Numbered from the stretch's first letter, positions 1,532 to 62,903 are shown. The stretch: DNA of 64,000 nucleotides from Trichoplax adhaerens (GCF_000150275.1 NW_002060949.1:3850449-3914448), one strand, 5' to 3'. Numbers and translations: made by a program. Notes: generated by a model not told the origin, from the sequence alone.

Positions 1532-2008
1532 AAAAATATTTCGTACTGCTTGTTGGGATGTTGCTGCATTCTATCCTTCGCTACTGGTATTGTGAGTGGA
1601 TTTAATGCCTTCCAAAATAGTATTGGTACATCAATCATTATCAACATTTTCATCTGCTTTTTCAATTTGATGTGCACTTGGGCCATCTATGCCGCTGGCT
1701 ATTCTATTCACCATAATAGAGTGGAAATCACTGTAAGTACTGTACATTGAAGTAAATTGGAGATATTGGTATGAGTGCTTTCCTTGATAGATACTATAGT
1801 TATTATTGATAATTAAGATATACTTAAATTGAACTGACAGAGAGCATCACGATGTGTGCAAAGTTCAACCTTACCTTCTCCACCAAGTTATGACTCCTGC
1901 TTGGCAACTACGGGCACTCCATCACAGACAAATTTGCCGATTTATGTTATAGAAACAGAGATCGTAAAGCTCCCTAACTACGATGAAGCATTGAAAATGA
2001 AAAAGTAA
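1532..2008 (+). CDS. Tetraspan PY-motif family member 1 (3' part: TM3-TM4 exon and tail; 5' exons unresolved)
   Basis: Exon 1532-1732 (atacag|AAA...ACT|gtaagt) encodes two hydrophobic helices, KNISYCLLGCCCILSFATGIVSGF...IIINIFICFFNLMCTWAIYAAGY. Exon 1841-2008 (gacag|AGA...TAA) encodes RASRCVQSSTLPSPPSYDSC...KLPNYDEALKMKK*. The intron is phase 0 and the layout matches the paralogs. An in-frame hydrophobic stretch at 1285-1428 with a weak donor may be the upstream exon. Confidence 0.75.
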
Positions 2009-4819
2009 CGACATTCGATTGCTATACGAGCATACTGTAATAACAAAATTGACCATATCATGAATTTACTTTTTTTAAAAAAGTAATATTAAATTTAACT
2101 TAAAAATTAGCTTTGTTATGATAACTACTTGTAGCTTGTCCGTATTATAATTATAATAATTAATTATAATTTATTGGTAGTAGAGAGTGTAAGTCTAGAT
2201 ATAAGATACCCAGGAAAAGATCTCATTTTTCTATAATATAGTTTAATTTTACTTTTCCGTTGTGGAATCACTTAATGCTAACTATAATGTATATGTATAA
2301 TAGTTTACGGACGTAGCGTAAATGTTCTGAAATATCCGGGTTGTTATTGTAACATAAAGGCTACTAGCTTGCTTAGCAAACTTAAATGAGATATGATTAA
2401 CCGGTCAAACGGAAGTCTTCAAGTACCCACATTATTTTATATTATACTGTATATGAATGCATAGCTTATCCATCTGCTGTTATGTGTATTATACGAGATA
2501 TTAACGCTCCTTCCAACTCGATATATCAAAAAAGATCTATACAACCGTGATTTAGGATATGGATAAGGTCCAATTTTTGTAAATATGCATCAAATAACGT
2601 ACAATCGTTTACCTGATTTAGCCGATTAATTCTATGATATTCTTATTCACATGTGCTAAGATCTGATAAATTTGTACTTCTTAAAATTTGTTTTTGTCGG
2701 CTGAAATGAAACGGTTCCTGTTTTACTACTCATTAATAATTACTGCCTACGATTAACTATTCATCACATATCTTTAAGATTGTGGATATTGTTATATCAA
2801 TACTATATAGATACGCATACTAATGCTGTTCCTGTTTTATGATCAAAAAATGAAAGATAAGTTAAAGCAATTTAAGGAAATTACATGGAGACACTAAATA
2901 GTAATTTGTAATTATAATGCGTTCGCTGAACTAGCCTATATCTGTGATCTACCAATTTAACTGAAATAATGATTGCAGTTTTTGCCAAAAATTTAGTGAA
3001 TTATCTTGTCTTCATTGCTTATCTATCTTTTATACGGTGTATTATCTATTTATTAAAGTTTTATTTTATTTTGCATTCTTAATTGCTGTTTTTATTGCTT
3101 TTTTCCTTGACGCAGGTCTCCTATTATATATACCGGTATATAATTGCGATATTATTACTGTCTATGCGGCGCTTTAAATCTAGGATGAGGTTATATTTAA
3201 TTCTGTACTTGAAAATTATGCTTCCAGCTAGACATTAGCACAACGACTATACTTTCAGAATCAACAACAGTCTTTGGTAGCCAGATAGAAAACTAATAAT
3301 GTAAAAGCATTATTCCTGTTAATACTAAATGAATCTACCTTTGTGCATTAAATATCATATTGCAGACTGCCATGAGCTGTTTTAAAGCAAAGTTGTAGAC
3401 ATGCATAGTTGTAAAGTTGTAGTTGTGTCTCGATGGTATTGATAAAAATGAAGCCCATGTACAAGTACGTAGAATAGGTATTTGGTGAAACACTGGCCTA
3501 CTGCTAAAGGTATACTATATCACCGCATAAATTTAACATCACAAAAATAAGTTTTTAACCCTTGCAATCACTACAGTTCACTGATGTTTCAAATTTACCA
3601 ATGTAATCTCTAGTAGGGACTACAGTGTAAAATAATGTTGAGCCTAGCATTTATTTGCTTGTCATTCTAGTATACGCTACCACTAAAACCATATACAACA
3701 CTGTACAAAACCAACTAAGCAGCTCATTTGGATGGCGATTGTAGACAGTATAGTATATCGTTTCAGATATACGCTTGAGTTGAAATGACCAGCAAACTGA
3801 TCAGGGTCTCTGCATTTTCAGTACATTGAACGACCGTTTTCTGTCCTTCTCTTTCTTTTTTCAGTATAGCACAAGTAGTGCCTGTCTCTCCTGTCTCTGA
3901 TACAGGTTTTAATTTAGAGAGAGATACGTAATCTCTCTGCACACCGGATAGAATTCTTTATGTACCATACAAATTGTAGATACAAATTGGCCAATCCACA
4001 CTCTCAACCATCTTGACTATTTCACCGTACTCCTTAATGAGCTTAAATGAGTAAAACGTCATCGAATACGTCATCGAATGCATTGATAACTATGTATAGT
4101 ATTTACTTGATATATATAACATCAATAACTATTTCCAAAGCTTCCTAGACAATAATTCATCAATTCATGACATTGTTTTTGCTGTGTACTACTGTATAAT
4201 TACAAATCACCAGGGTAAAAGGAAAACAACTGCTAACGGCATTGTCCCTGCGGTGCGGAAAACATGATTATCAATTAATTACATCGTTATGAGACAATTA
4301 GTGATATGTAGTTGCTAATGAGATTGAATTTATCATAGTAGAATATACTATAGATCAGCACTGTATGATACCTTCAATACAAGTTGATACAGTTTTTCCC
4401 TAGTTTTTTCTAGTCAATTAAAGTGATTAACGATAGAATAGCTAACCAAACTTAATCCATTTAATAACAGCAATCACTGTATCAGTGCGATATAGGATAC
4501 TTTTTTTTCACTTAGTAAACGGATGTTGGAATTGGAATATAAATTCCCTGCTTAAAATCTAGCATCAGATATCGATAAATTTACTTGGATTAATTATTAA
4601 CAAACACTTGTTAGCGCTACGTATACTGTATGATAGGATCGATGCCGGTGCTGTCATGATAGGGATGGCGTTATAACAGATTTTCTACTTCACGCTTCCG
4701 TAATCAATATGATTTTGGGAAAGAAATTTTAGAAAGGAAGATCTTCATCACTGCCAATATTCTTCAGTTAATAGAATACATGTTATACAGGATATCATCG
4801 ATAAAGATAACTGAAATCC

Positions 4820-7686
4820 ATGGACTTAGATAGAGACAATAGCGGATGTCCGCAATCACCGTCTTCAAACTTAGAATCATTCGATAGCCCTAATCAAAGA
4901 ATTACTAGCAATCGAATATTTCGATATGGTTGGATCCTTATGACTATTGGTATAGGGTGCTTCGTGACGAAATCACTTTACGTTGCTCTAACGCCTGGAA
5001 CAGATAACTTGACAATCATTTACTTAGCAGCGGGCTGTGTAAGTTGATTATATACAATTATAGATATTTGTGACAAGATGCAATAACATAAAAGTATTAA
5101 AACGCTAAAGGTAAACTTTACGTATTGCAGTTAATTGACGATACAGATATTGTGAGCATGTTATGTAAATATCTATTTTTAACTGATATACGAAGACCAG
5201 ATTACAAGTAAATGAAAATAAATTATCAATAAATCATTTCAAAATACTGTATTTTTGTACGCAATAAATTATTTATCCAGAAAAAATTAGTATTCCTGCC
5301 GTATTTTGACAATTAAAGCAGTCAACGTTTATTCACCTAACTCAAACCGAAGTTATAGCGTACTGTATAACAATATTAGTTTCGCGTTATATAAGTATAT
5401 AATGTAATCCATTTGTAATTAATAAAATTTAATCCCAAAGAAGATTAACTTCGAAAAATTCTCAAACATATATATATATATAACATATATATAAATCTTC
5501 TGTTTTCATTTGTAAAAGTATCTCAAAGCAAATTATCGAATTCCCATGCTAGCACTGTATCATCTCAAATGTACTTAATTGTTATGATGATATCAACAAG
5601 TTGTCGTACGATATAGATTCATAGATCAATTGTTATGAAATGGCTTGGATCTAAAAATTCATTTCATAACCAAATTAAAAAATGAATTATTGATACTGGT
5701 CGATTGTTATTACCAGGCTTACTAATCTTACGCTAGAGCATTTAATTAATCCGATGTGTGCTGCTTGTAGCACTGAGCTCCCATTCTACACGTAGCATCA
5801 ACTGGTGACGCTGTCTTCCTCATTGCAACCAGATTCAGTTTTTGACTCTTTTATGGCCTAGTATTACCATATGATGTTCCACAAGAAACCTCATCTCTTT
5901 AAATTTAGTCGAAAGTGACAGATCTTTATCGCATTTAATACAATTATAACTAGATGTGGTATAAGAAATTTGTTGGCCGCTAGGCTTGGTCTCAGAACTA
6001 GTCGAAGCTTATTTATTCCTATCTTATAAGATAGACTTTAAAACAAGGCTGTTTAATTAACTCACTTTAATGAAAATGATTTATCGATCAGATTGACGGA
6101 AATTAATCGATCTTAAATTTCAGCTTCGGATCTTATGTTGTGATTTCATTCACCACTAAGTATCAATTAGCTATATAACATAAGATGACATATTCGTCAT
6201 TTACTATGTGCCGCTTTTAATAAAAAAATTGGTCGATATTGCTCCATTGAAGTAAAATTTATTTCTTTTACCTACCCACAGATTATATTCAGTGGTTCCT
6301 TGATTATATTCGTATTTTGGAATACCTCACGCGCGATGTCATCAATAAAAAGCGTAAGTGAAATCCCATTTTTCTTGCATGAATATTTAGCTACTTTCTC
6401 ACTTTTGCATCTGGTAATTATGCGATAAGTCACAAATGAAGCTTTCCAAATAACTTGCTGCATATAGAATTAAGTAATTTAAGAAATCTCTTTATTACGT
6501 TAACTAGCGCTTTTCGTAATCAAGCAAATTGAGAGATTATTCCATAGTCGAGCTACTAGCATAGTATTAAGTAAATTTAAAAAAAGTTGAAGTAAATTAA
6601 ATTATTTATTGCTACTGGATTAATAAAATCCTTAATCTCTCTAATTATATTAAATGCACTCTAAAAACTTAATAACATTAATTGATTTATATTCGTTTTA
6701 GCCCTGCTATTATTATGGCATCTTAACACTGACAACAGTGTTACCGTTAATAAGTTTTGTTATATGTATCATAAATGCCGTGGCTGGAATTAATGTAGTG
6801 GCTAAAGCAACTAACATTGTATTGTCAATCCTATTTATGGCGGCTAGTGCGATTATTTGTATTTGTATGTACGAAGTTAGTCAGAACAGACGGGCAACAG
6901 TGAGTATTAACACCTGCAGTGCAAATAATAAAATCTAATAAATCTTCGATTTATTCAAACTAGCATTATTACGTATGATACTGTATCTACGGAGTTAAAA
7001 TCTTTACTTGGATTTGAGTTACTATTTCATCATGCCACTATACGTATACTCGTATAGCCAATACTGATTATTGCCGTGTATTATTTCGATGATATACCAT
7101 ATGCACGTCGTGCCACCAACAGTGCCATCTGTTAAATTATTACATCGATTTAACGTAGTTTTGTAAACTAACAAGATTAGGTCACAAAAATTAACTTAGA
7201 TAAATTTGTTAAAGTTAGTCAACAGACGGACATTTAGTGCTATTTAGAAGATAAAAGCAGATTGAATTTGTACTGGTAGTCATGCAAATGTTTCCTGTAT
7301 TTTATCTGACGCTACGCCACCACTTATAGTATCGATTATTGTCTACTTTTAAATGATCCATTATTTTAATTCGTTTTAATTGATAATAATCTCATAAACA
7401 CTATTACACACAGGAGCCTCATAGATCAGAAACAACGCAATCAAGGTCTTACATCATTCCAGTCGCTTGGGATAATCCACCACCTTATCATCCACCGCCA
7501 ACTTATCGTTCGAATCCACCCTCTGCAGTAGATTTAAGATCTACCAACGATAGCTCACAAATTAACGACAATGAGCTTGGTCGTTCTCATGTCATCGACA
7601 GTCGCAATGATCAGCAACCAAAAACTTATTTGGTAATTGCATCACCACCAAGCTATGATAATGCTAATGCCAATAGTGAACGATAG
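4820..7686 (+). CDS. Tetraspan (MS4A/CD20-like) membrane protein with three PPxY motifs, member 2, 253 aa
   Basis: Exons 4820-5038, 6282-6353, 6702-6899 and 7414-7686; canonical GT-AG sites, all phase 0, open frame. Four hydrophobic segments; the junction reads YLAAGC|IIFSGSLIIF, resembling the MS4A FIISGSL motif. Tail contains NPPPYHPPPTY and SPPSYDNA. Confidence 0.85.
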
Positions 7687-10600
7687 GATCATCGCTGAAG
7701 TAAACTACTGAATAGGTCTTTCAGTGAATGCCACACTTTAATGCAGATTGTACCCCTTCGAGAAAAAATTTACTGGTAATATCAGATAAATTTTTGTATT
7801 GATTTCGTTAATCATTCTATTTCCTTTGCTGATTATTAAGATGATAAACAGATCATTCAGTAATGCTGGCACTCCATTTGCTAGATAGATTTTATACTGC
7901 TATACATATATATAAGCACAAATACATCACGGTAGGGTTGTATATTGCGTAGTTTAATTTATTTATAAAGCCAATATATTAATCTAAACCAAATTATGTT
8001 TCATTTTAATTTTTGTTGGATTATTTTTATATCAACTGTAACTAAAAATAATGTTGTAGCATAATCGTCCGGAGGGATGAAGTTAGCAAAACAGGGTGAT
8101 TTTGCTTATAAGTTAATCAAATATTCCAATCTTACATTGGAAACATATTTTACATTCTTGGCTGATGCATAATTTACGATAGCGAAGTTACTATTATATT
8201 TCACACGATATGATTAAATCCAAATGGTAACTGCAACGGAATTGACAAGTGTAACAATATTATACATGTAAACAATTTTCTATCTTACCACTGTATCTAA
8301 TATTATTTTAAATGTTGTTTTACTGACTCATGGCAATGCATCCTATCGAGGATTATCATGTTTCATAAGTTTTATCCAAATTGAAGAATTTAAAATAATA
8401 TCTATTACTTACCTCATTCTGTTGCCGTAATTTCATGGCAATCTTTCAATATAAATTAATACAAATTTACAGTACTTCCAGTTACCACAACATAAACGAT
8501 ACGATGATAAGTGAATTACAAAAAGCAAACTATGAAATTAATGTGCTTGAACTCCATATCAAAGTCAAAAAACTTGATTATATTTATAAAATAAAAAAAT
8601 ATCATTTATTGAAAAATGTATCGTTGAATCAAGGTTGCAATTGTCACAAAAGAGAAGACAAATACAATGTATCTGCTTTCATAGTGATTAAAACTATAAC
8701 AAAGAATTTAAGCTGATCATAATTCTTTATAAAAATTTTTAGAGAAAAAGAATAAATATCAATAGTGATTCAGTGTCCATAATTAGAAGTATAAAATCTA
8801 GTATAGAATGATATCGCATATTAGGCCGGAAAATCTCACGGTAAACATGTATATTTTCGTTGTAAAGTCTTTTGCATTAGATTCATATATTAGTTTAATT
8901 ATGAAACTAGAATTATTTGGGAAGCAAATGATAATAAGATTTAGCAAGAATCTATTAACTACTGACCAATTCCTAATATTTAGTTATGCACTTCTACTGA
9001 GAAATCGTGTTATTTATTCTCAATGTTTATCTAACTGAGTCAGACTCAGATATGGTGATTTAATGGTGATAATGTTTATGAAATAAATATAATGAATACT
9101 TTAACCGCTTGATAGTATGCGACTAATCAGTCGGTGAATAGTTAGGCTGACAATATAAATAGGTGATTTACGTAAGTAGCATACCTCTACAAAATTTAAT
9201 GACGATAAAGAAATAGAAGTTGTTTTTAAAATACGGCCTGAGGGGCAGGCAAGTACAAACTCGTTTTCTTAGTTTAATACTATGTAACGTTATATAGAAT
9301 TCAAATACGGCATGTCGAAGGAATCATTGAATACCATTTTTCATCAATTTTTACTTTCGGTTAGGCCGTAACCTATATATCCGTATATAAAAGTTAACGA
9401 AAACAGAAGATATTACGATTTATTATCGACTGGTTGCTACGCTTAATTTACCAACTAGAAATGTGACTTCTTTTTGAACCTAAGTTATAACATCAGATTA
9501 AAAATGACCTATAGAAATATATACTAAGCCAGGAGGAGGCATATTTAGCATATGGAATTCTTATATTTTGATGTATTCTCTTAAAGCATATCCCAGTCTG
9601 ACTGCATTATTCTAGAGACATACGATTCTTATCCCACTATAAATACTTGTCAGATCATTTAAGAAGTAAATTCTGCATTGCTTATTGCATTAACTCACCG
9701 CAAAATGAAAGCTCAAGTGTCATCGTCGTGATGGGATTTTGCGACTCTCGACTCTAATCTTAGTTTTGAATATAGGACGGCTTGTCGAATGGCTTTAATT
9801 CAATAGCCGAGTTAAAATAGACAATTATACTTGCACGTCTGAAATTTACAAAATTACTAGAATGCTTGCATTTCTTTTAAATGTATATCACCTTAAATCG
9901 AAAAAGAGGTTAGCCCGTTATGCACTACCAATAGCAACGAAATTCATCTATTGGGTAGAATAAAATAGCTACATTTAATCGAAGTATTTCAATATTTTAT
10001 TTTACTATAAGTAAGATCCATGTTGCTCTTACAGCTAGAAAGAAAGAGACTAAACACATTGACGTTTGATTGCTGTCACTAAGTAAGCACAATGTTATCG
10101 TAGTATCAGGCTTAATACCAGAATGGGACAAAGTTTTAGTATGCGTTAACCGATAACTGAAAAACTTCAAACTAAGAATAAAAATATACCGATGTCCAAT
10201 TTTGGCATCTATGCCATGGAGTAATTTCAAAGTAAATTTCACTGATAATTATAATAGAATTCAACTTATGGTAATAATATTAGCTAATTATACTAGCGGT
10301 TTATTTATTAATATGACTATTTTATTAGTACTTCTTCAAGAATATCCTACAGTACATTCCGATGAATAAAAGTGCATAATCTCTTACATATTCTTTAAAA
10401 TATATGCTAGGGCTAAGCTATGCCATGCAAGCATAAAGCGCAATACTATTTACCGACAATTTTCTCTTCATAGAGGTGAATTATGTCAAAGGTTTTAATA
10501 CAAACAATATTGATTATTGCACTCAGTGAGCGAAGTCCAATCAGTTTGTAATTTATTTGAAGGAATTAAAAATAGTCGGCACGTGCTCACTCTACATTCC

Positions 10601-13506: not shown

Positions 13507-16070
13507 ATGCACCGGATGAATCAGAATCGGAAAAGCAGACAACAAAAACGACATCTACAATTACAATTCCTTTTACAGTATACCATTTTCGTAATTAGTT
13601 TATTACACTGTCTGTTATGCCTAGTCGGAGCATTACAGCTACAATTTGGAAAAGGGAAAAATGTCACGTTTTTCATCTCAGTTCCATTGGTAAGTAGAAC
13701 TGTTTCAATTTAATTCAAGTCTACGAGAATACTTATGCATAATCGATATATTTGTTTTTTAAAATTACTTTTGGGCTTAAAGTGCATTATAGTATGGCCG
13801 TTAATTTAAAGATATAACTATTGTAAGAGATAAAACCTTTCAGCTTAGAATCTTTCTGTAATTTTTGATGTACGTAGAGTACAAGTTATAATCAGTGGGA
13901 GACAAGTTAGTAATGCTAAAGTATGGTATGTCTGCGAGTATGCCAAGATTTGCGCATAGTTATCTATCTAGAAACCACACCCACTAACTGCAAATATGTA
14001 TAACTCTAATTGCAATCTCAATTTACCGGTAACAAATCACTAAATAAGCATTTTATAATCACAGTTGTTCAGAAGATTTCATCTGTGATAAACATTTGTT
14101 TTATCAGGCCTGAACTCTAATCGTTCATTCGTCACAATCGTGACTTAGGTCTAGATGGTACCTTTTTTATCATCTAAGATAGAATGCTTCCTATGGGATT
14201 CTTTAACATAGTATCACATAAATAAGTAAATTTAGAATAGTAGGTTGTGCTGAATTAGTCTTAATCTGTGACACGAAAGAAAACCCAATATGAGGCTATC
14301 TATTTTTTGCTCATTATGTGCCTCGATCTTAACATTCTGTGGTGATATTTCAGTTCATTCTTAAATCCTTCATGATGCTGTATTTTGAACATATACACTG
14401 AATATTGATAGCATCCCCCAGTTACTAAATGAGTGCCTAAATAGAAATTTACAGATTAAGTAACGATATAACGTAATTTAAATATTTAATTACTAGAAAT
14501 AAGGTTATCATACAGTTATGGCTCTGCTTTTGCATTTTATTTAACCATACTTTTGTAATTAAGCAAAATATTTGCTTACTATTACTTAGTCAGTAAACAA
14601 AATCCGCACTAAGGCATATTATAAACTAATTTTCCTATCCGCGTTGCTAAAGCTCTAGCTTTGAAAATCTGTCTTGAAACATAATTTTATATCCGATTCC
14701 TGCTTATAAATAGCGTATTAAGTTGAAATATTCTTATAAGATCCAAGACTCACTTTATTATAAAATTCTTGTAAGAGAGAGACATAATAAGTAATAAATA
14801 ATAAAGGCTTAGGATATCTTACACGGGAAAAATGCTCTACATATTTTAAAATATCTTAGGAGATACATACTTATGTGCACTCACTAACGGATTCAGACGT
14901 TAGTTCTCATGGAATTTTTCTTTATCTAACAGTAGCTTGACTGCGTTCGTTTAAAGTCATATTACAAAAATTGTTGTCATGAATTTAGCACTGTAACTTG
15001 ATAATTTATAGTCTAATTTATTTTATTTCTAATAATGCTATTAATTTGTATTTTAGATTAATTTAATAAATATTATTGCCTTTGGTGGCTTAATTTTAAA
15101 TCGTTATTTTAATTATGGAGATAAAAACAGCGGAAGACTTTGTAAGGTAAATCAGTTCTATCATTTCTATTACCATCAATTTACTACATAAAATGAATGA
15201 AAGAGAAATAAACTGGAATTGAACTTAATTTCACCTGAAATCCTTATTATGTTATCGTGATAATTTATATCTAACGTTTCGTTGACTTTCTTTGTAGTCC
15301 TATCTTGTACGAGGACTGAGGTTTTTATCGATTGGAGGGACGGCTGCAATTACTACAATGAGTCTTATTACTGTCGCAGATAATAAAGCTAACACCCTCA
15401 TCTTTGCTGGTACTAGTAATGCATGTATGTTGATAGCAGTGTTACTACTCAGCATTGCAGATGCCTTTCTGGCGATCAGATATAATAAGGTTTGTGCAGT
15501 CTGTGATTTTAATTACCTAAGTTAATCTATCTTTAGTTGCAACCTAAAATTTGAATATATAGACTATTCTATATTGCTCTGTATTAAACGTATTGGTATA
15601 TTATAAAAAAATGAGTACAATGAAATGTTAAAATTATCGTTTAAAATGATAAATGATTTCAATTAGATTCGACACACTTTTACTAATGGTAAATACTACT
15701 AAAGAATTATAATACAGCCATTGCCGAACCTTATCTTCTTCAAAATTAATATTATATTTTCACCATTTTATAAAGAAATATTATTTATTATAATATAATT
15801 GATAATTTCTATACTAGTTAAAGGCTGTAGAAGTGAATTATTGAGATCGATTCATTTTAAATAACTTTGTATCTGTAGATAGATATTCTAAAGGTATGAA
15901 TTTTAACAATATCCATTTTTGCTATTTAGCTTTATCATGCTAGGAGTACGAAAAGAATTAAAGCGTTGCCACGTATTAGAGTAGGCGATCCTGACAAACT
16001 CGAAAATCGCTTGATAAGTCTAAACGTGTACAAGATGCCGAACGAAGTACTGAAAGTGTCGACTACATAG
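13507..16070 (+). CDS. Tetraspan family member 3 (no PY motif), about 201 aa
   Basis: Exons 13507-13689, 15057-15146, 15298-15489 and 15930-16070; GT-AG, phase 0, same exon-size pattern as the paralogs, four hydrophobic segments. Probable 5'UTR intron at 13374-13504. The last-exon acceptor is less certain. Confidence 0.75.
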
Positions 16071-22000: not shown

Positions 22001-22134
22001 CCGCTTTGGCCAATATTGAGACATCTTTTATCGCAATGGTGGAATTAATGAATGAAACTCATCACAAGGAAGTCATTTTGGATCAGGAATGTCGCATTCT
22101 TCTACGAGAAAATCAACAGTATTTTGTCCATTGA
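19043..22134 (+). CDS. ZBED-like protein: BED zinc finger plus hAT transposase-derived domain, 696 aa, probably domesticated
   Basis: Exons 19043-19241 (G|gttagt) and 20243-22134 (tttttag|GT). Splicing rebuilds a BED finger, STVWQYF...CQV-...-CEHKIKGKFPTNLKQHLKAYH. hAT motifs present: LLTDS, CPTRWISTY, TLLDPRYK, FWISS...LSSIAVDILSIPA...IETSF. Confidence 0.9.
19953..20162. repeat. Two-copy tandem duplication (period about 110 bp) in the ZBED intron
   Basis: gccgc...tacaatttttaattacatatagtttaggcaaaaaatgaaagcattacttttaattgctgttgtctattggat occurs at about 19953 and 20063, nearly identical. Confidence 0.9.
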
Positions 22135-22895: not shown

Positions 22896-23189
22896 TAATT
22901 CATCCTATTGCCAAGGGAGTTTGACGATAGGATTTTTTGTTGTAAGTACCGAAGGAATAAAAAAAAATCCTTTCTATTAATTAAAATAACTCATACAAGG
23001 ACATTTGTTATTTTCTTACTCCATGCAAGGATAACTATATACCGCCTAAGGCAAGCTTTGACATTGCGTGGAAGTAGTTGAATGTATGTGATCAGACTTG
23101 GAACGATTAAACTGTATCTAATCTTAATTTAAGGTCTATCAATTCTTCTGAAATTAATAGGTATTAATGAATTATCAGTTATTGCATGA

Positions 23190-49400: not shown

Positions 49401-51222
49401 TGCTATGTCTCGGTTGTCATCCATGGCAGCGAAGCCATTAATTATCAATCTTTACCAGCGTTACAAGTAATTTGCACTGCTCGCATATGGACATTGATAA
49501 TTGGTTTTACTCTTGCTTTTGGCTCGTTATTCTCCAAAATGTGGCGAGTGTATAAGATTTTTACGAATAAAACTGCAAAGTCTGTGGTAAGAGTTTCTTC
49601 CTTTCTACAATTGGCGATAACTTGAATAACTATCTTCCATTAGCTGATGTAATCCATAGTTTTATAAATCCTTCATTAATAGTAGAAGTCCACCTTTTCA
49701 TCAGATCAGCCATCATACAATTACTTTATTCAGCATAGGAGACTATTTTACTTTCCTAGTCTTGCCACGTTACTGCTGTAAATAGCTGAAATCACTACAG
49801 CTGAATATTGCCCCGTATAAAATCTTTTATTTATTGATTAAGCTATCTAAGTCATTACTACTGTAAAGGAAAAGATCAGCCTTGACAATAATTATCAATA
49901 GTTATTTCTCCAATTTGTCTGGTGTTATCATCTGCTCGAATATGATACGGTCAATGATAGATTTTCGTTCAATATAGTAATGATATACTAGTAGTAAATG
50001 GCTACAATATCGCATCCACGATCAAAAGCCTTAAAGTTACCCTATTTCAATGCAACGGCTGTAGCAATGTCTATTACTTATACTTTTTATTTTTACTCAT
50101 TTACAGATTATCAGAGATAGGCAATTGTTTTCCATTACGGTTATTCTAGCTCTAATCGACCTAGTTTTGCTAACATTATGGCAAATTATTGATCCGCTAG
50201 TTCCAACTTGGCAGGTCGTTAACCTTACGGTAAGTTTGGAAGCCATAAATTAAGGTCATCGTTCAATGTAAAATCTAGCATGGTAGATAGTAACTTTACT
50301 CACGACATAAAAGTATCTTTTGCATTCTCGTAATAAAATGAGTATCCAAGGTTTACTTTTCATGGACCCAAGGTATTTCAAAACAGATTAGCCAAATTAG
50401 AACAGAATAACATTATGTTCTAATCTTGATTTCGTATGTACAGTACACGTAAAATGATATTCTGTACAAATATCGTTACGATCGGTAGTTATCTAATCGT
50501 CTTCATTAGAATTATTTTCCCGTAAGTAGTTGGTCGAACATTTCTAATTTAAGAACAGACCAATCTAATTATCATAGAAGTATCATTATACTTCAATTTC
50601 GATTTCTGATACAAAAATCCATTCTTGCACTTGTATAACTTGGGGATCTACGATTATTCACTCGTACTCATTTCTTTCTAATAGACTATGCGTACGCAGT
50701 CGAATATTCTAATTCGAGAAAGCTACCTGATTTGTACCTGCAGCAATATCACCATCTGGATTGGAATCACTTTGGCTTACAAATTTGTAGTCTTAATATT
50801 TGGTGCTTTCTTGTCGTGGGAAACACGGAGCGTCAACATTCCAGCTTTAAACGATTCCTATCACGTTGGCTTATCTATTTATAATGTAGTTATAATTTGC
50901 ACGATCGGATTTTTAATCAATATCCTTGTTCCAGTTACACCGCAGACTGCTTTTGTTGTTACTGGTACTTTTATTATATTTTGCACAACATCCATTGTCT
51001 GTTTCATATTTTTTCCTAAGGTAAAACCAGTGCGTACTTAAGCCATATTGTACCAAATATTTGAGATATTTAAATGTTAATTAATGATGTAATGATTGAT
51101 TACTATCTTAGGTTAAATCCAAGCTCAATCCCACCGTTACTTATGGCTTATCGCGAAGGATCTACCCTGAAGCAGCGGGTGAAATACGCAGTAAGATTCC
51201 TGAAACTTTGGGTTCGGAATAA
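37437..51222 (+). CDS. GABA-B receptor-like class C GPCR (Venus flytrap + 7TM), 14 exons, 768 aa
   Basis: Exons 37437-37718, 38118-38255, 45955-46128, 46251-46352, 46986-47051, 47320-47511, 47866-48099, 48419-48479, 48682-48774, 48984-49134, 49343-49586, 50107-50229, 50685-51020 and 51112-51222 join in frame (2307 nt). Signal peptide, AINDINNRTDLLPGY, DARIV, YDSVYALALAL, WPGGKIP, IKMSSPKINN, GSLFSKMWRVYKIF, WQIIDP, WETRSVNIPALNDS, FFPK. No cysteine-rich domain, as in the GABA-B type. Confidence 0.93.
41120..41440. repeat. Diverged two-copy tandem duplication (period about 167 bp) in GPCR intron 2
   Basis: atttcaaactgtaa...tgaacta...ctggttt...atgaaatgatca.aaaatctaaa at about 41120 and 41287. 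Confidence 0.8.
41701..42062. repeat. Diverged two-copy tandem duplication (period about 182 bp) in GPCR intron 2
   Basis: tgaat..ctgatgg...catatgtatcc...attgtagca...gcgatac...gatttatattt...aagatt.aaaa at about 41701 and 41883. Confidence 0.8.
45580..45954. repeat. Diverged two-copy tandem duplication (period about 200 bp) ending at the exon 3 acceptor
   Basis: tcttagct...ctattgctttaatggat...aaatgatagcaa...cattaaa at about 45580 and 45781. Confidence 0.75.
48101..48352. repeat. Two-copy tandem duplication (period about 127 bp) in GPCR intron 7
   Basis: taagttcatgat...ctctgaatagga.aatttta.aattctt.gatatg...gcttaatttatg.cattt.agtttatta repeated. Confidence 0.85.
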
Positions 51223-52647: not shown

Positions 52648-55600
52648 TCAGTATATATCATTATAGGCTGGGAGATCACCGGGACCAGCAGGGGCAGAAG
52701 GTTGTGCACTATAGGGAGGCATCGGACTGGTTTGTGCATTCAGTCTAAAATCAATAGTTCCATGGGCTGCGACTGGAGAAGTGGCCCTAGCAGTATTTTG
52801 AGTTGGTGGAGATGGATTCGATGGAGGAGGATTAGTAATTTCGGATGTTTCGTCAGTAGGGCGGGCAATGGCATGCGTTATGGTATCAATTCTCTAGCAA
52901 AATTGTAATTGAATGGATAATAGTATACAAATTGTTAATTTGATTTCGATTGTGGAGTAGCATTTAGTGGGTACATAAGTTTACATATACAATTATGGCA
53001 ATAATCGTATGAAGCTTTATGTAGCTATGATTTCTTACCGATGTTACACTCCATAATTGTCCAGACATGAGAATACCTAACAAACTGAGAATAGCTGAAA
53101 TACAGTAGACTACAGCTAGACCGGCATTTATAATAAATATGTCGGTTATTATTTTACTATGCGTAGTCACGGCATAATACGTCGATATCAAACATCCAAC
53201 GGCAGCCATTGTAGACGATAGCATAGGTAATAAAATGGTAAAACAATTCTGCAAGAAAAGAATAACCCGATTGGACTTAGATATTGACTAGTATAGAAGC
53301 CACAGTATAAAAACACGAAACGATTGCAAAGCGTTTTAAAATGATACCGCAATGTACTATAATTCTACTGATAGTTAATTCAATTCGCTTACTAGGACTA
53401 TACAAGCGCGTTCATCAAGAATTTTATCGATTGACTTTGTTTACGAAAGATCAAGGTAGTTTGATAGGCTAAATTTCTACATTGCATTGCATATTATGCA
53501 TTAGTATCACATATCTCTTTTTTATTGTTTAACTCTGCTGAAAGTTAGTGTAATCCAGTCTACTGTAAGAAGAAGTGAAATATTTTAAATCGTGTGCAAG
53601 TAGGAAGCAACGGAAGCTTAGATGACATTTTTCAATCATGACATGTCATGAAATTATCATTAACTAAATGAATACCAAACACTATCCTAGTCTATATAGA
53701 ATTTTATTTGCAAATGACAGATTCTTTTTTATTAAATTACGCTTTCGGAGAAAGGCTATTTATAAGCCAGACTTACAAATTTTCTGCCATCTGATGAGGC
53801 TCTTTTATAAATATAAAGCAGTACCACCGCAGCAACTCCATCAAAAATAACCTACAATTTTAAAATAATATTAGTCTATTTGCCGAATGGAACACAGGTT
53901 AATATCAGTTATTGGCGTACGTTCGATAATTACTTGAAGAAATGAACGCTGGCACATTTTATTTTTTTTACCATCTTAACATGGAATCTAGCTTTTAACT
54001 AATTCATACGATTGTCTTTTAGTCCGTTGATGCTCTATTGGTATAACTTATTGTAGCGTAAATTGTGGTGTCTCAGCTAGACGGTAAGGTGTATAATTTA
54101 TTTATATGGCACAGGCACGGGCAAAGACTGAAATGACGAGTATTGAAAGAAAAGTTATGGCGCTACACTTGAGTTTAATATACTGAAATACTGAACCTCT
54201 TGTAATTATCTGTACTACTGAATAAAAATAATGTCCCAATTTTCAATTTTACCACGTAGATGTGTAGGAAGACATCGGATTAACTAATCTTGGGGCTAAA
54301 TACTGGATTTGATATGAAGTGCAAGACAGTACTTTCCTTTGCAGTAGCCGAAGCTACTTCATTCTTAGGATTAAAGTTCTGTACTACCAGTTTACTCGTG
54401 TACGCAAAAGAAATATGACGCTCCACTGTACACCTCGTATTCTACAGAATGATATTCTGTATCGACTCTTTCATATCATTTTTACTATAGGGTTAAGACT
54501 AGAAATTCTAGAATTATACCTCGAATAATTATAGTCATAAAAGTACAGTAGAAGGAATCAAGAGTACAAGTATAGATTGAATCAATACTGTGAACTATAC
54601 CTTCATCAATAGAATACAGTAGTACTATCCCGAATACGCGTATGTCATTTCCAATAGAATGACTTGCTGTCATCAGGAAAATACTTGAATGGGAATAAAA
54701 GTGTGACAGAAGATTCTTAGACAGTAAAAGATGGTATTCAAAGATGAGAATCTACCGTCTATCCCATCTGCAATGGATGACTGTCATAGTGAAAAAAAAT
54801 GCCTTAGGGTCAGCGATATCTTGTTATTGAGTAATGCTTACGTGGTCAAGATTAATTGATTGCGGGCTAATTGCTGTGAAGAATAACTGCAAGTGATCGG
54901 TGGAACATACATGGCACTAGGTCTAGTTGAAAGATTGTAGCTTGCGTGTTTCTATTCTAAGCGTACACGAAGAAATGCACACAAGTCTATATTCTATCAA
55001 TCTGCTAGTTTCGGATAAGCTTAAAGTTGGACTATCTAGAGATGTTCCATTATATTCATTACCGAATCCACGCAATGAAATGGATAGCTAATGATGCAAT
55101 GTAGTACACAGATTTACACTCATTCGTTCACCTTTTTTTACTATCGAATAGGAAGAAAATAGAACATTGAACCTCAAATTCATTCAAAGTACGTAAAGAA
55201 TTTGTAATGAATCGATGGATTTTCCTAATAAAACATTCGATTATACCATTACACCTGCAAAAGTGCATTATTCTAGCCTTGGTTATTTTTTTTTCACGAA
55301 ATGACAAAGAACATGAATGTAGAAAAGCACTGCCAACACCATACTTACGCGTATACTGTATCAGCAATAAACAATAAACTATTGGCAATGACTCGCTTCT
55401 CTGTGTGATTTCTCATTTTCAATTAATTGGTGGAATAGGGGAAAATTCTTATTCAATGAGTAAGGCGGTAGGGGCAAACAGACATTGTTCGAGGCAGTAC
55501 TGCCTTAAGATAGCTAGTGTAAATTGTATCGACGTTGAAATTGAACGAAAAATTAAAAGTAATGACTTATTTCTCGATGTTATTGCCATATCGAATTAAT

Positions 55601-56896
55601 TGGTGGAATAGGGGAAAATCCATATTCAATGGGTAAGGCGGTAAAATTAAAGCTTAATTGGCTTTATTCAAGGCAGTGCTACCTTTTCCCCCCTCGTCCC
55701 TTGCTAGAGTAAATTGTATAGACATTGAAATAGAATAAAAAAGATAGTTTGGCCGTATTCCACACGATATACTTCCATACTCTGGTATTATGAAAATGGA
55801 TTTTTACAGACGGCGCTCTCTATCAAGTCCGCAGTATCGACTGTTATCGTTAACGAACGAAAATTAGAAAGATTGCAAACAGTTTGAGCGGTACTGTATC
55901 ACCATAGTACCAGTATCGATCATGGATTCTTTTATTTTCAGGAATCAACTTTAGTATCTATGACTGGCTAATGCAAGTCCATTTCTAAAGTACTTTTGAA
56001 GTGGAGAAACGAGAGGACATTACTATACTACACTTATGAAGACGACTCTTGATATAGAGAGGCGGGCGGAGGGGACTTATTGAAGATATTATTGGCTACA
56101 CTTTGAAGTCGACACAGTATTGTAGTGCTAGTTGTGTCGAACAGCAAATTTGAACTAATGACTTATTAATCCAATCGGAATGATATCGACAACAACTAAT
56201 CGAAAGTTAGAGTCCGTAATTTGATCGAGTAGAGTACAAGATGATCCCTTTTTAATGTACAGTATTCCACAGTAACATTCATTTATAAGAATAGTTACTA
56301 ACGTCAGTACAGTACAGAGACCTAATCTTGATTGTGTTAAAGTCAACAACCTTATCTAACAAGGTAATCACTAATGTGTAATACGCAATGTGTAGTGCCA
56401 ATCATTAATGCATAAGATCGTTGTATGGATAATCTATAAGCCAAGTTTTTACTTATTATAGTCGAGTTCCTCAATCTCTAGTTTTGACACTGATCTCTCA
56501 ACCAAAGTAATACAATAGCCTATTATTATCTAACAACGTTTAGATTACTGTGAATTTTATTACATCCACTCGATCATGATCGACATGATGCATTTGCACA
56601 AGCGATAAGAAAGAGCAAGCTAAGGAGTCAAAAATGAATCATTAATCAATCCATTTGGTACTTACTTGTCCACTGATAGAATAATATAAAATTCGGTAGG
56701 CCAATTGGTATTTTTGCAAGACTGAACTCACGATGTTGACGGCCATGGTGACCAAACCAAGTACTGAGGAAATGGAAAGTAGAGCTACTGCGGCGATAAA
56801 GTAGCGTCGTTGATTGATAAGCAATGACCTCTTTCTGGCGTCGTTAGCAGGCGAATTAGACGGTCGTGAATTTTCTCGTTGTCGTTCAATGGCCAT
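52648..56896 (-). CDS. Tetraspan family member 4 with PSAP and LPxY motifs, 253 aa
   Basis: Minus-strand exons 56896-56666, 53851-53777 (VIFDGVAAVVLLYIYKRASSDGRKF), 53248-53039 and 52893-52648; canonical sites, phase 0. Tail ends SPMPPYSAQPSAPAGPGDLPAYNDIY*. Confidence 0.87.
55421..55735. repeat. Two-copy tandem duplication (period about 173 bp), intronic
   Basis: aattaattggtggaataggggaaaat...tattcaatg.gtaaggcggta...gctag.gtaaattgtat.gac.ttgaaat at about 55421 and 55594. Confidence 0.8.
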
Positions 56897-60271: not shown

Positions 60272-61247
60272 CTATCCGCAAAGCATGTTATTGAGTGGAG
60301 TAGCTATCGAAACTTTCACTACACAGTACACATAGGACAATACGAATTTAATAGCAACATCAGGTCTTGCAATGATCGGCATAGCTAGCACTTGTCATAC
60401 AATTTCCACACTCACTCTACAGTACTCCAAGCTCTGTTGTAGTACTGATAGTTGATAAATACATGAAGAATGAGAAATTCATGATTTACCTACAACTCTA
60501 TCAATGACTAGAGTTAAAACACTTCAACAACTGCCAAAGTCATGCAAAGGATTGCCTACAAAGGATCTTACATCTAGCCCAAATTATCAAAAAGTAATTT
60601 GTACAATTATAATTAAGCTACATTATAATTATCACCATTACTAACCATCTAATACTCTACCACACCGAAGTTTAGCTAAGCCGATACTACACCCGTCTGC
60701 GGAACAAACCAAGTCTATTTAACTTGTTACTATAGAAACTTATTCTTATGATCATGGAAAGAATTGTACCAGTGTTATTAGCCAATAGTCATGGCTTTGT
60801 AATGTATAGTATTGTGATAGTGTATCTTATTAAAGTAATGAAATCCGTATGAGCGAGAGTAAATACAATAAGGAAGCGAAACTGCATCTTTTATTTGTCC
60901 CAGATGTTGCCTCTCGGCTATTACTGTAGTATTACTCATCGTTGAATCAAAAATACAGTATTTAGAAATAGTATTAATTTTATCATCGTGTGGCTTGTAA
61001 GTTCTATATGATTGACTAAATAAAGTTGTCAATTAATCATTATGTTTAAGAAAGACAAATCGTAGTGAATGATATTAACGTAGCGCTGATGAAATAATTG
61101 CCTACAGAAATACGCGTATTCTCAATTTTCCCCCTACTAGGAAAGTGTAATGTCGTCTTCATGTATCTCATATTTCGTCACATAAAGTGATCTTCCAAAG
61201 CAGTAATTGCATGCTGTTATAAAAATACTTCAAGTTGCAGTCTACCG

Positions 61248-62903
61248 ATGGCGATCTCAATGGCCCCTACAACGAGACAGCAAGCTTTAACAGCTGTAAG
61301 GCCAGTTGTACGCAGAATTTTTTTGTGCTGGACTTTCGAATTAATTGTTGGCTTTATTCACATTGGCCTTGCTCTACCAACATATTACCAAATCAATTAT
61401 GACGTTCGTTATCTAGTCATATTTATTACTACGGGCGGCTTGGTAAGTAAAAGTCGTTAAGAAAAGATTTAATCTCATTATGATGAATAATTCTAAGAAT
61501 CAATTTGTTAATGTGAAAGCTAGCACTGTATAACCAAACATTAATATTAAATGGAGGTGACGTAATTTAATACTGATAGTATCAATTTACCCCGGCGTCG
61601 CCATTCAACTTGATTCGACAGATGAAAGAATAAGATAAAATTGATTTTTGTTTACTAAAATCTTGGAACGAAACTATAACTATTATCAACCAACTTTATA
61701 ATTTCCTATCCATCAATATCCTATAAATATGTGTATTGCTTTATCAAATTAATTTCTCTAGACAATTTTTTTCAACATCCATTTTATCTGGAAGCTTAAG
61801 AATCATCGTGATCAACAAAGTCTACATGACATGGTAGGTCATCGTTAAAATCATATATCCAAGAAACACACAAATTAATTAAACTGATAACAATCGAATA
61901 TCAGAATTGAGCCTTAATATTGATTTTCAACAATTTTTACAGTCATGGATATCCTATTTTCTACCGGCTTTAACAGCTTCTATGGCTGGTGTCTCAGCCC
62001 TATTAACCATTTTCCTTATGGCTAATTCAAATACTCAACTCTCCGTAATACTATTTATATCGCAATCCGCTTCATTTGCTATTAATGTAGCGTTAAATTT
62101 TGCTGGACTATATGGATTAGCGAAAATTTATACAAAATTGAATCCCCAGGTAACTACTACTTTTGAGACAATATCTTCTTTCTAGCCAATACTTAGACGG
62201 ATTATCAATAAAACTAATATTTACAGTAAAGCTTTAGTACCAAGACAAATGTCTTGCATCTTAGTCTAAATTGACTGCAACATGTAATCTACATTTTAAA
62301 ATACTGTATGGAGATGTATAATTAATTTATCGTCAAAATTATTTTATAGAAAAACAACACTCAGAGGGCGATTGCACCAGCTACTGCTGATGAAGATATA
62401 CAACTTTTAACGCAAAATCCTCATCTTAATCAGATAATCGAGTACGGAACCCAACAAGGTTTCGACAACGATAATACAGTTAGTGATGCTGAGAAACTTC
62501 GATTCAACCGTATCGAAGAGATAATGGCAGAGTACAAGCCGTAGTTTCCATAACCCGTGAAACTAATATTATTCATCATCATCATCGATATGAAGGAAAT
62601 GCTACTAGACCCGATGTTCCACGTAGCAGAAATACACTACCCCGAATTACTCATTCTACCGTTGACGCTACCGCACCGGAATTACCTTCTGAAGAGGAGC
62701 ATTACGGAACAAATTATGCCATCGAAAGGCACGATCCACAATCATCGGATATATCAAGGGAACCTTTACAAAAACCCGTTCTACCAAATATTACGCAACA
62801 GGCACATGCATTGAATGCACCCTCTGATAATGTAAATAAGAACGAGGACGGAGTTGGACTACCGTCATATAATGAAATATTTTCATCTCAAGAGAAACAG
62901 TGA
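61248..62903 (+). CDS. Tetraspan family member 5; last exon appears frameshifted before the LPSY tail
   Basis: Exons 61248-61442, 61762-61833, 61943-62149 and 62350 onward; phase 0. The entry frame stops at 62542-62544. The -1 frame is open 62493-62903 and ends GLPSYNEIFSSQEKQ*, matching the family's terminal motif. Confidence 0.8.

What the first reader, a model, noticed from the sequence alone, without database searches (positions are those of the whole stretch)
1532..62903. Hidden family of at least five divergent four-TM proteins with PPxY/LPxY tails: a candidate Nedd4-adaptor repertoire
Seen: genes at about 1.5, 4.8, 13.5, 52.6-56.9 and 61.2 kb share one design (only the last two exons resolved for member 1). 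Exon 1 holds the N-terminus, TM1 and half of TM2; exon 2 is 72-90 nt; exon 3 is 192-210 nt with TM3-TM4; exon 4 is a polar tail; all introns are phase 0. Sequence identity is very low, yet four tails keep a near-terminal motif: LPNYDEA, PPSYDNA, LPAYNDI, LPSYNEI. Known: PPxY/LPxY motifs bind WW domains of Nedd4-family HECT ligases, and multi-pass PY proteins (LAPTM4/5, TMEM127, ENTREP/FAM189, NDFIP) route membrane cargo for ubiquitin-dependent degradation. The IIFSGSL segment recalls MS4A/CD20. Inference: a lineage-specific expansion of adaptors with variable membrane faces and a constant ligase-recruiting tail.
Basis: partly seen in the sequence, partly recalled or inferred. Interest (0 to 1): 0.82.

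Follow-up and report, generated by a model that had tools for sequence, protein, structure and literature searches.

The report
Clustered four-pass PY-tail membrane genes
The placozoan Trichoplax adhaerens has a tandem array of at least seven very diverged small four-helix membrane-protein genes (five in this window, three of them unannotated). They share one exon plan, and six have cytosolic L/PPxY tails that probably dock Nedd4-type ubiquitin ligases. The genes are real and conserved, but they are a variation on a known theme rather than a new kind of system.

Summary
The window is Trichoplax adhaerens scaffold C1408. All five genes exist with one plan:
- Exon 1 holds the N-terminus, TM1 and half of TM2.
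- Exon 2 is 72-90 nt.
- Exon 3 is 192-210 nt and holds TM3-TM4.
- Exon 4 is a polar tail.
- Introns are GT-AG and phase 0.

I located member 1's missing exons just upstream of the window, and two more members further upstream, giving at least seven genes.

Only members 3 and 5 are in protein databases (B3S174, B3S177). Members 1, 2 and 4 are unannotated. All three have orthologues on contigs from other placozoans, with the same splice sites, saturated dS and dN/dS of about 0.05-0.25. Those orthologues keep member 4's C-terminal PSAP...LPxY block and member 1's N-terminal PPSY.

Six of seven tails carry [LP]PxY (chance 0.02-0.11 per tail). Charge bias puts both termini in the cytosol. The genome encodes at least three WW-HECT ligases.

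There is no Pfam hit and no relative outside Placozoa. Genuine CD20-like genes of the same genome share the exon plan, and one of them is ENTREP-like with PPxY motifs. Sequence, profile and structure tests of that link are inconclusive.

Ligase docking and adaptor function are inferred, not shown.

The scan had already noted similar tetraspan arrays elsewhere in this genome (s1-739343, s1-744557, s1-744603).

The parts
1532..1732 (+). Member 1, exon 3 (TM3-TM4, 201 nt, phase 0). E1 and E2 lie upstream of the window at G000:C1408:3848945-3849193 and 3850371-3850442.
   Evidence: the orthologue's E1 and E2 on L039 are
1841..2008 (+). Member 1, exon 4: polar tail with PPSYDSC, LPIYVIE and the near-terminal LPNYDEA
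4820..5038 (+). Member 2, exon 1 (N-terminus, TM1, first half of TM2)
   Evidence: orthologues P0004-P0006 are 75% identical and the TM part is nearly identical
6282..6353 (+). Member 2, exon 2 (72 nt; IIFSGSLIIFVFW plus a basic loop)
   Evidence: the orthologue exon on L025:1715-1786 is 88% identical
6702..6899 (+). Member 2, exon 3 (TM3-TM4, 198 nt)
   Evidence: BLASTP to mB exon 3 gives E = 1e-3
7414..7686 (+). Member 2, exon 4: tail with PPPY, PPTY and the near-terminal PPSYDNA
13507..13689 (+). Member 3, exon 1 (annotated protein B3S174 / XP_002114102)
15057..15146 (+). Member 3, exon 2 (90 nt)
15298..15489 (+). Member 3, exon 3 (TM3-TM4, 192 nt)
15930..16070 (+). Member 3, exon 4: basic tail without a PY motif
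56666..56896 (-). Member 4, exon 1
   Evidence: the orthologue on L016:1800-2036 is 62% identical
53777..53851 (-). Member 4, exon 2 (75 nt)
   Evidence: the orthologue on L016:3737-3811 is also 75 nt
53039..53248 (-). Member 4, exon 3 (TM3-TM4, 210 nt)
   Evidence: (P0003); BLASTP to member 5 gives E = 6e-5
52648..52893 (-). Member 4, exon 4: tail with MPPY, PSAP and the terminal LPAYNDIY. The block Y..QPSAPA..PGDLPxY..I is conserved in the orthologue.
61248..61442 (+). Member 5, exon 1 (annotated protein B3S177 / TRIADDRAFT_58227, which starts at the second ATG)
61762..61833 (+). Member 5, exon 2 (72 nt, in frame)
61943..62149 (+). Member 5, exon 3 (TM3-TM4, 207 nt)
62350..62903 (+). Member 5 tail region. 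The exon-4 frame stops at 62543-62545. The PY-bearing ORF (62493-62903, LPSYNEI) is in another frame. The public model joins the two by a 137-nt intron at 62459-62595.

Best explanation
The window holds the core of an old tandem array in Trichoplax adhaerens. At least seven genes lie within about 78 kb, and five of them are in the window. Each encodes a small (about 150-300 aa) four-pass membrane protein with both termini in the cytosol.

The genes descend from one ancestor. This is shown by a shared four-exon, phase-0 plan and by chains of exon-level similarity.

They are probably very diverged relatives of the CD20-like tetraspans (the PF04103 superfamily, which includes ENTREP/FAM189). This is inferred from the identical exon plan of bona fide CD20-like genes in the same genome, and is not proven.

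Six of the seven have cytosolic tails with one to three L/PPxY motifs, often as [LP]PxY[DN][DENQ][AIV] near the C-terminus. m4 also has PSAP.

The most likely mechanism is inferred from the established L/PPxY-WW interaction. The motifs dock the WW domains of the Nedd4-family HECT ligases that the genome encodes. The tetraspans, and membrane proteins associated with their diverged transmembrane faces, are then ubiquitinated and routed through the endosomal/ESCRT pathway. This is how ENTREP, LAPTM4/5 and NDFIP act in other animals.
For: Identity and reality of the genes:
- P0001 and P0002 are T. adhaerens B3S177 and B3S174.
- Orthologues of the unannotated m4, m2 and m1 sit on ENA/Logan contigs. 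They have the same exon sizes and gtaagt donors, 56-88% amino-acid identity, saturated dS and dN/dS of about 0.05-0.25.

One family:
- The exon plan is identical in seven genes.
- BLASTP gives mB-m2 E1 3e-4 and E3 1e-3, and m4-m5 E3 6e-5.
- Shuffle z-scores are m1-m2 3.8 (E1) and 2.4 (E2), and m2-m4 3.7 (E2).

PY motifs:
- They occur in 6 of 7 tails, against a chance of 0.02-0.11 per tail.
- The orthologues conserve Y..QPSAPA..PGDLPxY..I (m4) and RSPPSYS (m1), while flanking residues diverge.

Topology:
- There are 65 K+R in the predicted cytosolic segments against 12 in the exoplasmic loops.
- Single-sequence AF2 models show four long helices at the expected places.

Ligases:
- WW x4 + HECT at C1411:5476394-5479059.
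- WW x3 + HECT at C1412:3178520-3181793.
- WW + HECT at C1413:5706394-5708835.

CD20 link:
- Three genes with PF04103 hits on exon 1 (E = 2e-4 to 2e-3) have E1 ending in mid-TM2 at phase 0, a 57-nt E2, and TM3-TM4 in E3.
- One of them has a long tail with PPVYNPPAY, which is ENTREP/FAM189-like.
- The ESM Atlas model of P0002 is structurally nearest, by query-normalised TM-score (0.68), to an MS4A3/CD20 cluster.
- ENTREP's PPxY motifs bind the WW domains of ITCH (PMC8811627).
Against: - There is no experimental or RNA evidence here for expression, splicing, ligase binding or cargo.
- Pfam found nothing on exons or on the full-length P0001 and P0002.
- hhalign against the genome's own CD20-like exons was not significant: P = 0.04, 0.25 and 0.055.
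- BLASTP of m4 E3 against ENTREP-like E3 gave only E = 0.12.
- The AF2 models are low confidence (pLDDT 53-56), and Foldseek and VIA returned only generic helical bundles.
- m3 has no PY motif. m3 and mA join the family only through architecture and position.
- m5 reaches its PY motif only through a weak intron or a frameshift.
- PY motifs also bind WW proteins that are not ligases.
Confidence: 0.55

Rival explanations
1. The proteins are primarily receptor, channel or scaffold-type CD20/MS4A-like tetraspans, for example chemosensory or signalling subunits. Their PY motifs only control their own endocytosis and turnover. On this reading they are ligase substrates, not adaptors that bring other cargo to the ligase.
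For: - The transmembrane parts are strongly conserved within each orthologue pair; m2's TM1-TM2 is nearly identical.
- The paralogues are extremely different from each other, which is typical of diversified ligand-facing or partner-facing families.
- The exon plan is CD20-like.
- m3 lacks a PY motif yet is conserved; it is identical in Trichoplax sp. H2.
Against: - The extracellular loops are very short (4-20 residues), which leaves little surface for ligand binding.
- Multiple PY motifs per tail, plus PSAP in m4, resemble dedicated adaptors such as NDFIP, ENTREP and ARRDC1.
- Nothing here distinguishes a substrate from an adaptor.
Confidence: 0.25
2. The L/PPxY tails recruit WW-domain proteins other than Nedd4-type ligases, for example YAP/Yorkie, WWOX, or MAGI/Kibra-type scaffolds. 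On this reading the family tethers or sequesters signalling proteins at membranes.
For: The genome has at least 19 WW-domain exon hits, and many of them are not next to a HECT domain. It is established knowledge that PPxY is the generic group-I WW ligand.
Against: - The LPxY variants and the [LP]PxY[DN][DE][AIV] context resemble, from memory and untested here, the Nedd4-binding motifs of NDFIP and LAPTM4B.
- The conserved PSAP next to the PY motif in m4 points to ESCRT-linked sorting.
- The closest known multi-pass PY proteins act through Nedd4-family ligases (PMC8811627).
Confidence: 0.1
3. The genes are not one family. Several unrelated small membrane-protein genes merely share hydrophobic architecture, and the PY motifs arose by convergence. 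At minimum, m3 and mA would be unrelated to the rest.
For: - Most paralogue pairs show no significant sequence similarity.
- Profiles built from five or eight members find no further member in the genome. The five-member profile did not even find mA or mB.
Against: - The four-exon plan, with 21 of 21 phase-0 introns and tightly matching exon sizes, is identical in seven neighbouring genes.
- Significant links exist for mB-m2 and m4-m5.
- Five of seven members share a proline-containing [LIM]P motif early in TM3 (read directly).
- Five of the genes lie head to tail at 5-8 kb spacing.
Confidence: 0.07

Closest known systems
ENTREP/FAM189 (CD20-like domain proteins with PPxY tails)
   Same: - A membrane protein of the CD20-like superfamily with cytosolic PPxY motifs that bind WW domains of the Nedd4-family ligase ITCH and promote receptor ubiquitination (PMC8811627).
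- Trichoplax has its own ENTREP-like gene 230 kb away, with the same E1/E2/E3 exon plan and a PPVYNPPAY motif.
   Different: - The array members give no PF04103 hit.
- Their tails are short (31-136 aa).
- Exon 2 is 72-90 nt rather than 57 nt.
- They lack the W-x-G signature in TM2.
- No relative was detected outside Placozoa.
LAPTM4A/4B/5 (Mtp family, PF03821)
   Same: Small four-pass endolysosomal proteins with C-terminal L/PPxY motifs that recruit Nedd4 (established knowledge). The LPSY-type near-terminal motifs are similar.
   Different: There is no PF03821 match on the proteins or on the locus. The exon plan was not compared.
NDFIP1/2 and yeast Bsd2
   Same: Multi-pass PY-motif adaptors and activators of Nedd4-family ligases. 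The LPxYDEA-like motif context is similar (from memory, untested here).
   Different: NDFIP has three TMs and N-terminal PY motifs. Here there are four TMs and mostly C-terminal motifs. No sequence similarity was found.
MS4A/CD20 proper
   Same: - Four-pass N-in/C-in topology.
- m2's IIFSGSL resembles the TM2 motif.
- The ESM Atlas structural neighbour is an MS4A3 cluster, TM 0.68.
- The intron falls in mid-TM2, as in the genome's own CD20-like genes.
   Different: - The Pfam model is not matched.
- The TM3-TM4 loop is very short.
- Zuccolo et al. 2010 (PMC2826416) concluded that invertebrates lack MS4A-like genes.
- PY tails are not an MS4A feature.
ARRDC1 (PSAP plus PPxY)
   Same: m4 and its orthologue conserve PSAP immediately upstream of the terminal LPxY. 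That is the TSG101 plus Nedd4-ligase motif pair used for ESCRT-dependent sorting and budding (established knowledge).
   Different: ARRDC1 is a soluble arrestin-fold protein, not a tetraspan.

Membership tests
CD20-like family (Pfam PF04103: MS4A, TMEM176, sarcospan, ENTREP/FAM189) | Match to the PF04103 profile at or above the gathering score | tested here: not met
   There was no PF04103 hit at E <= 10 on the exon translations tested (E1, E3 and one tail) or on full-length P0001 and P0002. A genome-wide PF04103 scan hits other loci only.
CD20-like family (Pfam PF04103: MS4A, TMEM176, sarcospan, ENTREP/FAM189) | Four TM helices with cytosolic N- and C-termini | tested here: met
   Hydropathy and K+R bias give 65 inside against 12 outside over seven members. 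The AF2 models show four long helices.
CD20-like family (Pfam PF04103: MS4A, TMEM176, sarcospan, ENTREP/FAM189) | The exon plan of the genome's own CD20-like genes: a phase-0 intron in mid-TM2, a short exon 2, and TM3-TM4 in exon 3 | tested here: met
   Genes A, B and C (L022, L023) compared with the seven members. Exon 2 is 57 nt in the CD20-like genes against 72-90 nt here. Whether vertebrate MS4A genes share these positions was not tested.
CD20-like family (Pfam PF04103: MS4A, TMEM176, sarcospan, ENTREP/FAM189) | Significant sequence or profile similarity to bona fide members | tested here: inconclusive
   hhalign gave P = 0.04-0.25; the partial alignments it did produce were colinear or in register, and one comparison aligned a single column. 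BLASTP of m4 E3 against gene C E3 gave E = 0.12 with 31% identity over 48 aa. Shuffle z was 4.7, which is not significant after multiple testing.
CD20-like family (Pfam PF04103: MS4A, TMEM176, sarcospan, ENTREP/FAM189) | Fold similarity to solved CD20 | tested here: inconclusive
   An ESM Atlas model neighbour is an MS4A3 cluster at TM 0.68. My AF2 models have pLDDT 53-56, and Foldseek and VIA list only generic helical bundles.
LAPTM (Mtp, PF03821) | Match to the PF03821 profile | tested here: not met
   There was no hit on P0001 or P0002. The genome scan gave one weak hit elsewhere.
LAPTM (Mtp, PF03821) | C-terminal L/PPxY motifs on a four-pass protein | tested here: met
NDFIP/Bsd2 Nedd4 adaptors | Three TM helices with N-terminal PY motifs | tested here: not met
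   Members have four TMs, and the motifs are C-terminal except for the extra N-terminal PPSY of m1.
Functional class: PY-motif adaptors or substrates of Nedd4-family ligases | A cytosolic L/PPxY motif conserved in orthologues | tested here: met
   The m4 tail block and the m1 N-terminal PPSY are conserved on contigs from other placozoans. This could not be tested for the tails of m2, m5 and mB.
Functional class: PY-motif adaptors or substrates of Nedd4-family ligases | Physical, PY-dependent binding to WW domains of a HECT ligase | not testable with these tools
   Only the presence of at least three WW-HECT genes in the genome was shown.

The most novel reading that the evidence does not exclude
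Placozoans carry an ancient, genome-wide repertoire of extremely diverged CD20-like tetraspans. It comprises this array together with the neighbouring and distant arrays already noted by the scan. Most members are invisible to sequence search and partly unannotated. Their constant PY (and PSAP) tails and variable membrane faces would form a combinatorial system of cargo-selective adaptors that feeds different membrane proteins to Nedd4-type ligases and ESCRT. That would be an early-animal solution to selective surface-protein turnover.
Probability: 0.2. Interest if true: 0.7.

Novelty: new variant of a known kind. Interest (0 to 1): 0.5.

Why it matters
- Three conserved genes in this window (m1, m2, m4) are missing from the public protein sets searched here, including T. 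adhaerens and Trichoplax sp. H2. mA and mB, upstream, were not checked. Exon-plan and orthologue evidence recovered what sequence search could not.
- If the tails do dock Nedd4-type ligases, one of the earliest-branching animals has a large, old, clustered set of tetraspan PY proteins. That bears on how ubiquitin-dependent sorting of surface proteins was organised at the origin of animals.
- The shared exon plan with bona fide CD20-like genes offers a testable route to extend the CD20/ENTREP superfamily well beyond what profiles detect. A 2010 study (PMC2826416) concluded that invertebrates have no MS4A-like genes.
- The kind of protein, a multi-pass PY-motif ligase partner, is already well known. 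This is an extension rather than a new principle.

Tried and rejected
- **Pfam.** Run on single exons and on full-length P0001 and P0002. Only sub-threshold noise came back.
- **PDB sequence searches.** phmmer and hmmsearch gave nothing relevant.
- **Whole-library HMM search.** An exon-3 profile against 1.84 billion representatives found only the two annotated members and one orthologue fragment.
- **Own-genome profile searches.** They recovered only the training members, so a census by sequence is not possible.
- **hhalign.** Family exon profiles against the genome's CD20-like exon profiles were not significant.
- **ESM Atlas feature search.** Only unnamed clusters came back. The top hit scored 0.90 for P0002 and 0.82 for P0001, within the range that shuffled sequences can reach.
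- **AF2 single-sequence models.** pLDDT was 55.6 and 53.0. Foldseek against the PDB had no hit at E <= 0.001. VIA wide listed only designed or generic four-helix bundles. The fold question is left open.
- **Mixed alignments for AF2.** Alignments of full-length proteins with exon fragments misplaced the fragments, so they were not used.
- **Word search with m2's tail.** No candidates were found.
- **SGSL-like reading of m5 exon 2.** Rejected, because it needs two compensating frame changes, while the in-frame reading gives a normal TM2 and matches B3S177.
- The intron coordinates were read instead.
- **Joined models.** m1, m2, m4, mA and mB were analysed exon by exon only, so no full-length Pfam, HHpred-type or structure test exists for them.

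Full report
**What the window is.** The sequence is about 32% G+C with spliced genes. It is G000:C1408:3850449-3914448 of a 105.6-Mb assembly in 1414 contigs. Two proteins retrieved from it are T. adhaerens B3S177/TRIADDRAFT_58227 and B3S174/XP_002114102. Nothing here is human. Between the family members lie a hAT transposase-like ORF, a DEAH11-like helicase-RBR gene and a class C GPCR.

**Checking the observation.** I rebuilt each gene from the DNA.
- E1 holds a basic N-terminus, TM1, a short loop and the first half of TM2.
- E2 (72, 72, 90, 75 and 72 nt) holds the second half of TM2 and a basic loop.
- E3 (201, 198, 192, 210 and 207 nt) holds TM3, a short loop and TM4.
- E4 is a polar tail.

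All E1-E2, E2-E3 and E3-E4 introns are GT-AG and phase 0, and donors are mostly gtaagt. The quoted motifs LPNYDEA, PPSYDNA, LPAYNDI and LPSYNEI are exact. m1 and m2 each carry two further [LP]PxY motifs, m4 has MPPY and PSAP, and m3 has none.

- m1's E1 and E2 lie just upstream of the window, at L014:8497-8745 and 9923-9994. E1 has an N-terminal PPSY.
- m4's E2 is 53777-53851.
- m5's E2 reads in frame as a normal TM2 half.
- m5's PY-bearing ORF is out of frame with the start of exon 4. The public model bridges the two with a 137-nt phase-1 intron that has weak sites. Both frames stay open well into that 'intron', so a frameshift or base error looks at least as likely. This is unresolved.

**The array is larger.** A structural scan for E3-like exons over the window and 40 kb of flanks recovered the five members and two more upstream. 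The scan looked for AG...GT exons of 183-219 nt, phase 0, with two hydrophobic segments.
- mB (L014:2086-3958) has exons of 186/72/201/312 nt and a tail with LPSYNQA, LPCYEDV and PPSYDEV.
- mA (L012:5443-7395) has exons of 198/72/198/96 nt and a tail with PPGY.
- The other candidates in that scan were GPCR exons and a few evident chance ORFs.

Five genes (mA, mB, m1, m2, m3) lie head to tail at 5-8 kb spacing. After about 36 kb of unrelated genes come m4 (minus strand) and m5. Further extension could not be examined.

**Are they real genes?** A profile of the five E3 exons, searched against 1.84 billion representative proteins, found only m5, m3 and a 93-aa ORF from an ENA metagenome. So m1, m2 and m4 are absent from public protein sets.

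The contigs behind that ORF, and behind word-search hits to m2 E1 and m1 E1, come from other placozoan lineages (G+C 33%). They carry the same exons with the same boundaries.

| Member | Locus | Exon sizes or exons seen | Amino-acid identity |
|---|---|---|---|
| m4 orthologue | L016 | 237/75/210 nt plus tail | 62 / 56 / 66 / 47% |
| m2 orthologue | L025 | E1, E2 | 75 / 88% |
| m1 orthologue | L039 | E1, E2 | 76 / 75% |

Synonymous sites are saturated (dS > 1). dN/dS is about 0.2-0.25 for m4's membrane exons, higher in its tail, and 0.05-0.12 for m1 and m2. m3 is identical in Trichoplax sp. H2. These are therefore conserved, selected genes, and the paralogues predate the split of these placozoan lineages. 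There is no transcript evidence in the tools.

**Are they one family?** Pairwise identity is 10-25%, and most pairs are not significant.

Significant or suggestive links:
- mB-m2: BLASTP E1 3e-4 and E3 1e-3, both gapless and colinear to the exon ends.
- m4-m5 E3: 6e-5.
- m1-m2: z = 3.8 (E1) and 2.4 (E2). TM2 reads SAGL|IVFCSSVLIY against AAGC|IIFSGSLIIF.
- m2-m4 E2: z = 3.7.

m3 and mA are tied in only by the exon plan, position and architecture. Five of seven members share a [LIM]P motif early in TM3, and all have an [IL]F/Y at the start of TM4. Taken with 21 of 21 phase-0 introns and matching exon sizes in adjacent genes, common descent by old tandem duplication is the only economical reading.

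**Topology and motifs.** K+R counts are 65 in the N-terminus, the TM2-TM3 loop and the tail start, against 12 in the two short loops. This gives N-in/C-in for all seven, which places the PY motifs in the cytosol. [LP]PxY occurs in six of seven tails, and shuffles give 0.02-0.11 per tail. The m4 orthologue keeps Y..QPSAPA..PGDLPxY..I at the very C-terminus although the rest of the tail has diverged and differs by more than 50 residues in length. Both m1 orthologues keep RSPPSYS. The genome encodes at least three WW-HECT ligases.

**What family?**
- Pfam gives nothing, even on the full-length P0001 and P0002.
- LAPTM (PF03821) and CD20 (PF04103) scans of the genome hit other loci.
- The PF04103 hits are informative. 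Two tandem genes on C1409 and one on C1408 have E1 ending in mid-TM2 at phase 0 (APIWSGIF|, APIWMGLL|). Each has a 57-nt E2 (YLMAGIFAIVSRKTRNIHL, YFISGVLCVYTTSKKTYCM), and an E3 with TM3-TM4. This is the same plan as the array.
- After the intron, both sets read x-hydrophobic-hydrophobic-x-G/S: YFISG against IIFSG (m2), VIFDG (m4) and IVFCS (m1).
- The C1408 gene, 230 kb upstream of the window, has a long tail with PPVYNPPAY. That resembles the FAM189 PPPYYPPEY motif described in PMC8811627, so Trichoplax already links a CD20-like domain to PPxY.
- Against this, hhalign of exon profiles is not significant, although the partial alignments it produces are colinear or in register. BLASTP of m4 E3 against the ENTREP-like E3 gives E = 0.12. 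The ESM Atlas neighbour (MS4A3 cluster, TM 0.68) is only a lead. My AF2 models were too poor to discriminate.

I therefore do not file the genes as CD20-family members. I rate remote homology as likely, at about 60%.

**Mechanism.**
- Shown: cytosolic, conserved L/PPxY motifs, with PSAP in one member, on conserved four-pass proteins, and WW-HECT ligases in the genome.
- Established elsewhere: L/PPxY binds the WW domains of Nedd4-family ligases. ENTREP, LAPTM and NDFIP use this to activate ligases and route membrane proteins to endosomes (PMC8811627, plus general knowledge).
- Inferred: the Trichoplax proteins do the same.

Whether they are adaptors or only substrates, and which WW proteins they bind, is open.

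**Limits.** Only the two database proteins (m3, m5) could be tested at full length.

Noticed in passing
L014:2086-3958 and L012:5443-7395 (G000:C1408:3842534-3844406 and 3835891-3837843): Two further family members lie upstream of the window. mB has three PY motifs and mA has PPGY. Both have the same four-exon, phase-0 plan.
   Followed up: yes
L012:3462-5196 versus 5297-6860: A direct duplication of about 1.7 kb at 96-100% identity covers mA's exons 1-2 and ends at a run of N. It is either an assembly or haplotype artefact or a very recent partial duplication.
   Followed up: partly
L023 (G000:C1408:3611001-3621000, minus strand): E1 7841-7984, E2 5016-5072, E3 3653-3892, tail 2937-3566: A bona fide CD20-like gene (PF04103 hit on exon 1) has a tail of more than 200 aa containing PPVYNPPAY. 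It is an ENTREP/FAM189-like gene on the same scaffold, 230 kb from the array.
   Followed up: partly
L022 (G000:C1409:5088001-5098000): 2390-3272 and 6687-8890: A tandem pair of CD20-like genes has identical exon plans, each with a 57-nt exon 2. Their tails have no PPxY.
   Followed up: partly
window 62459-62595: Member 5's public model (B3S177) needs a 137-nt phase-1 intron with a weak donor (gtttcg). Both reading frames stay open well inside it, which fits a frameshift or base error better than an intron.
   Followed up: partly
window 20272-22134 (+): A 620-aa intact ORF has hAT dimerisation and hAT-like RNase-H domains. It is flanked by short tandem duplications at 19952-20162, 22593-22896 and 23318-23542.
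   Followed up: partly
window 26998-32568 (+): A DEAH-type helicase is fused to a KH_DEAH11 domain and a RING-IBR-IBR (RBR) module in a 1355-aa ORF. A separate upstream ORF and a 102-nt x4 tandem repeat (27804-28215) lie in front of it.
   Followed up: partly
window 24602-24992: A 135-nt tandem repeat (2.9 copies, 98% identical) forms a 191-aa repetitive ORF. Its meaning is unknown.
   Followed up: no
window 37437-51041 (+): A multi-exon class C (7tm_3) GPCR gene lies between members 3 and 4.
   Followed up: partly
G000:C1411:5476394-5479059; C1412:3178520-3181793; C1413:5706394-5708835: Three loci have WW-domain exons directly upstream of HECT exons. These are the candidate Nedd4-family ligases of this genome.
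   Followed up: partly
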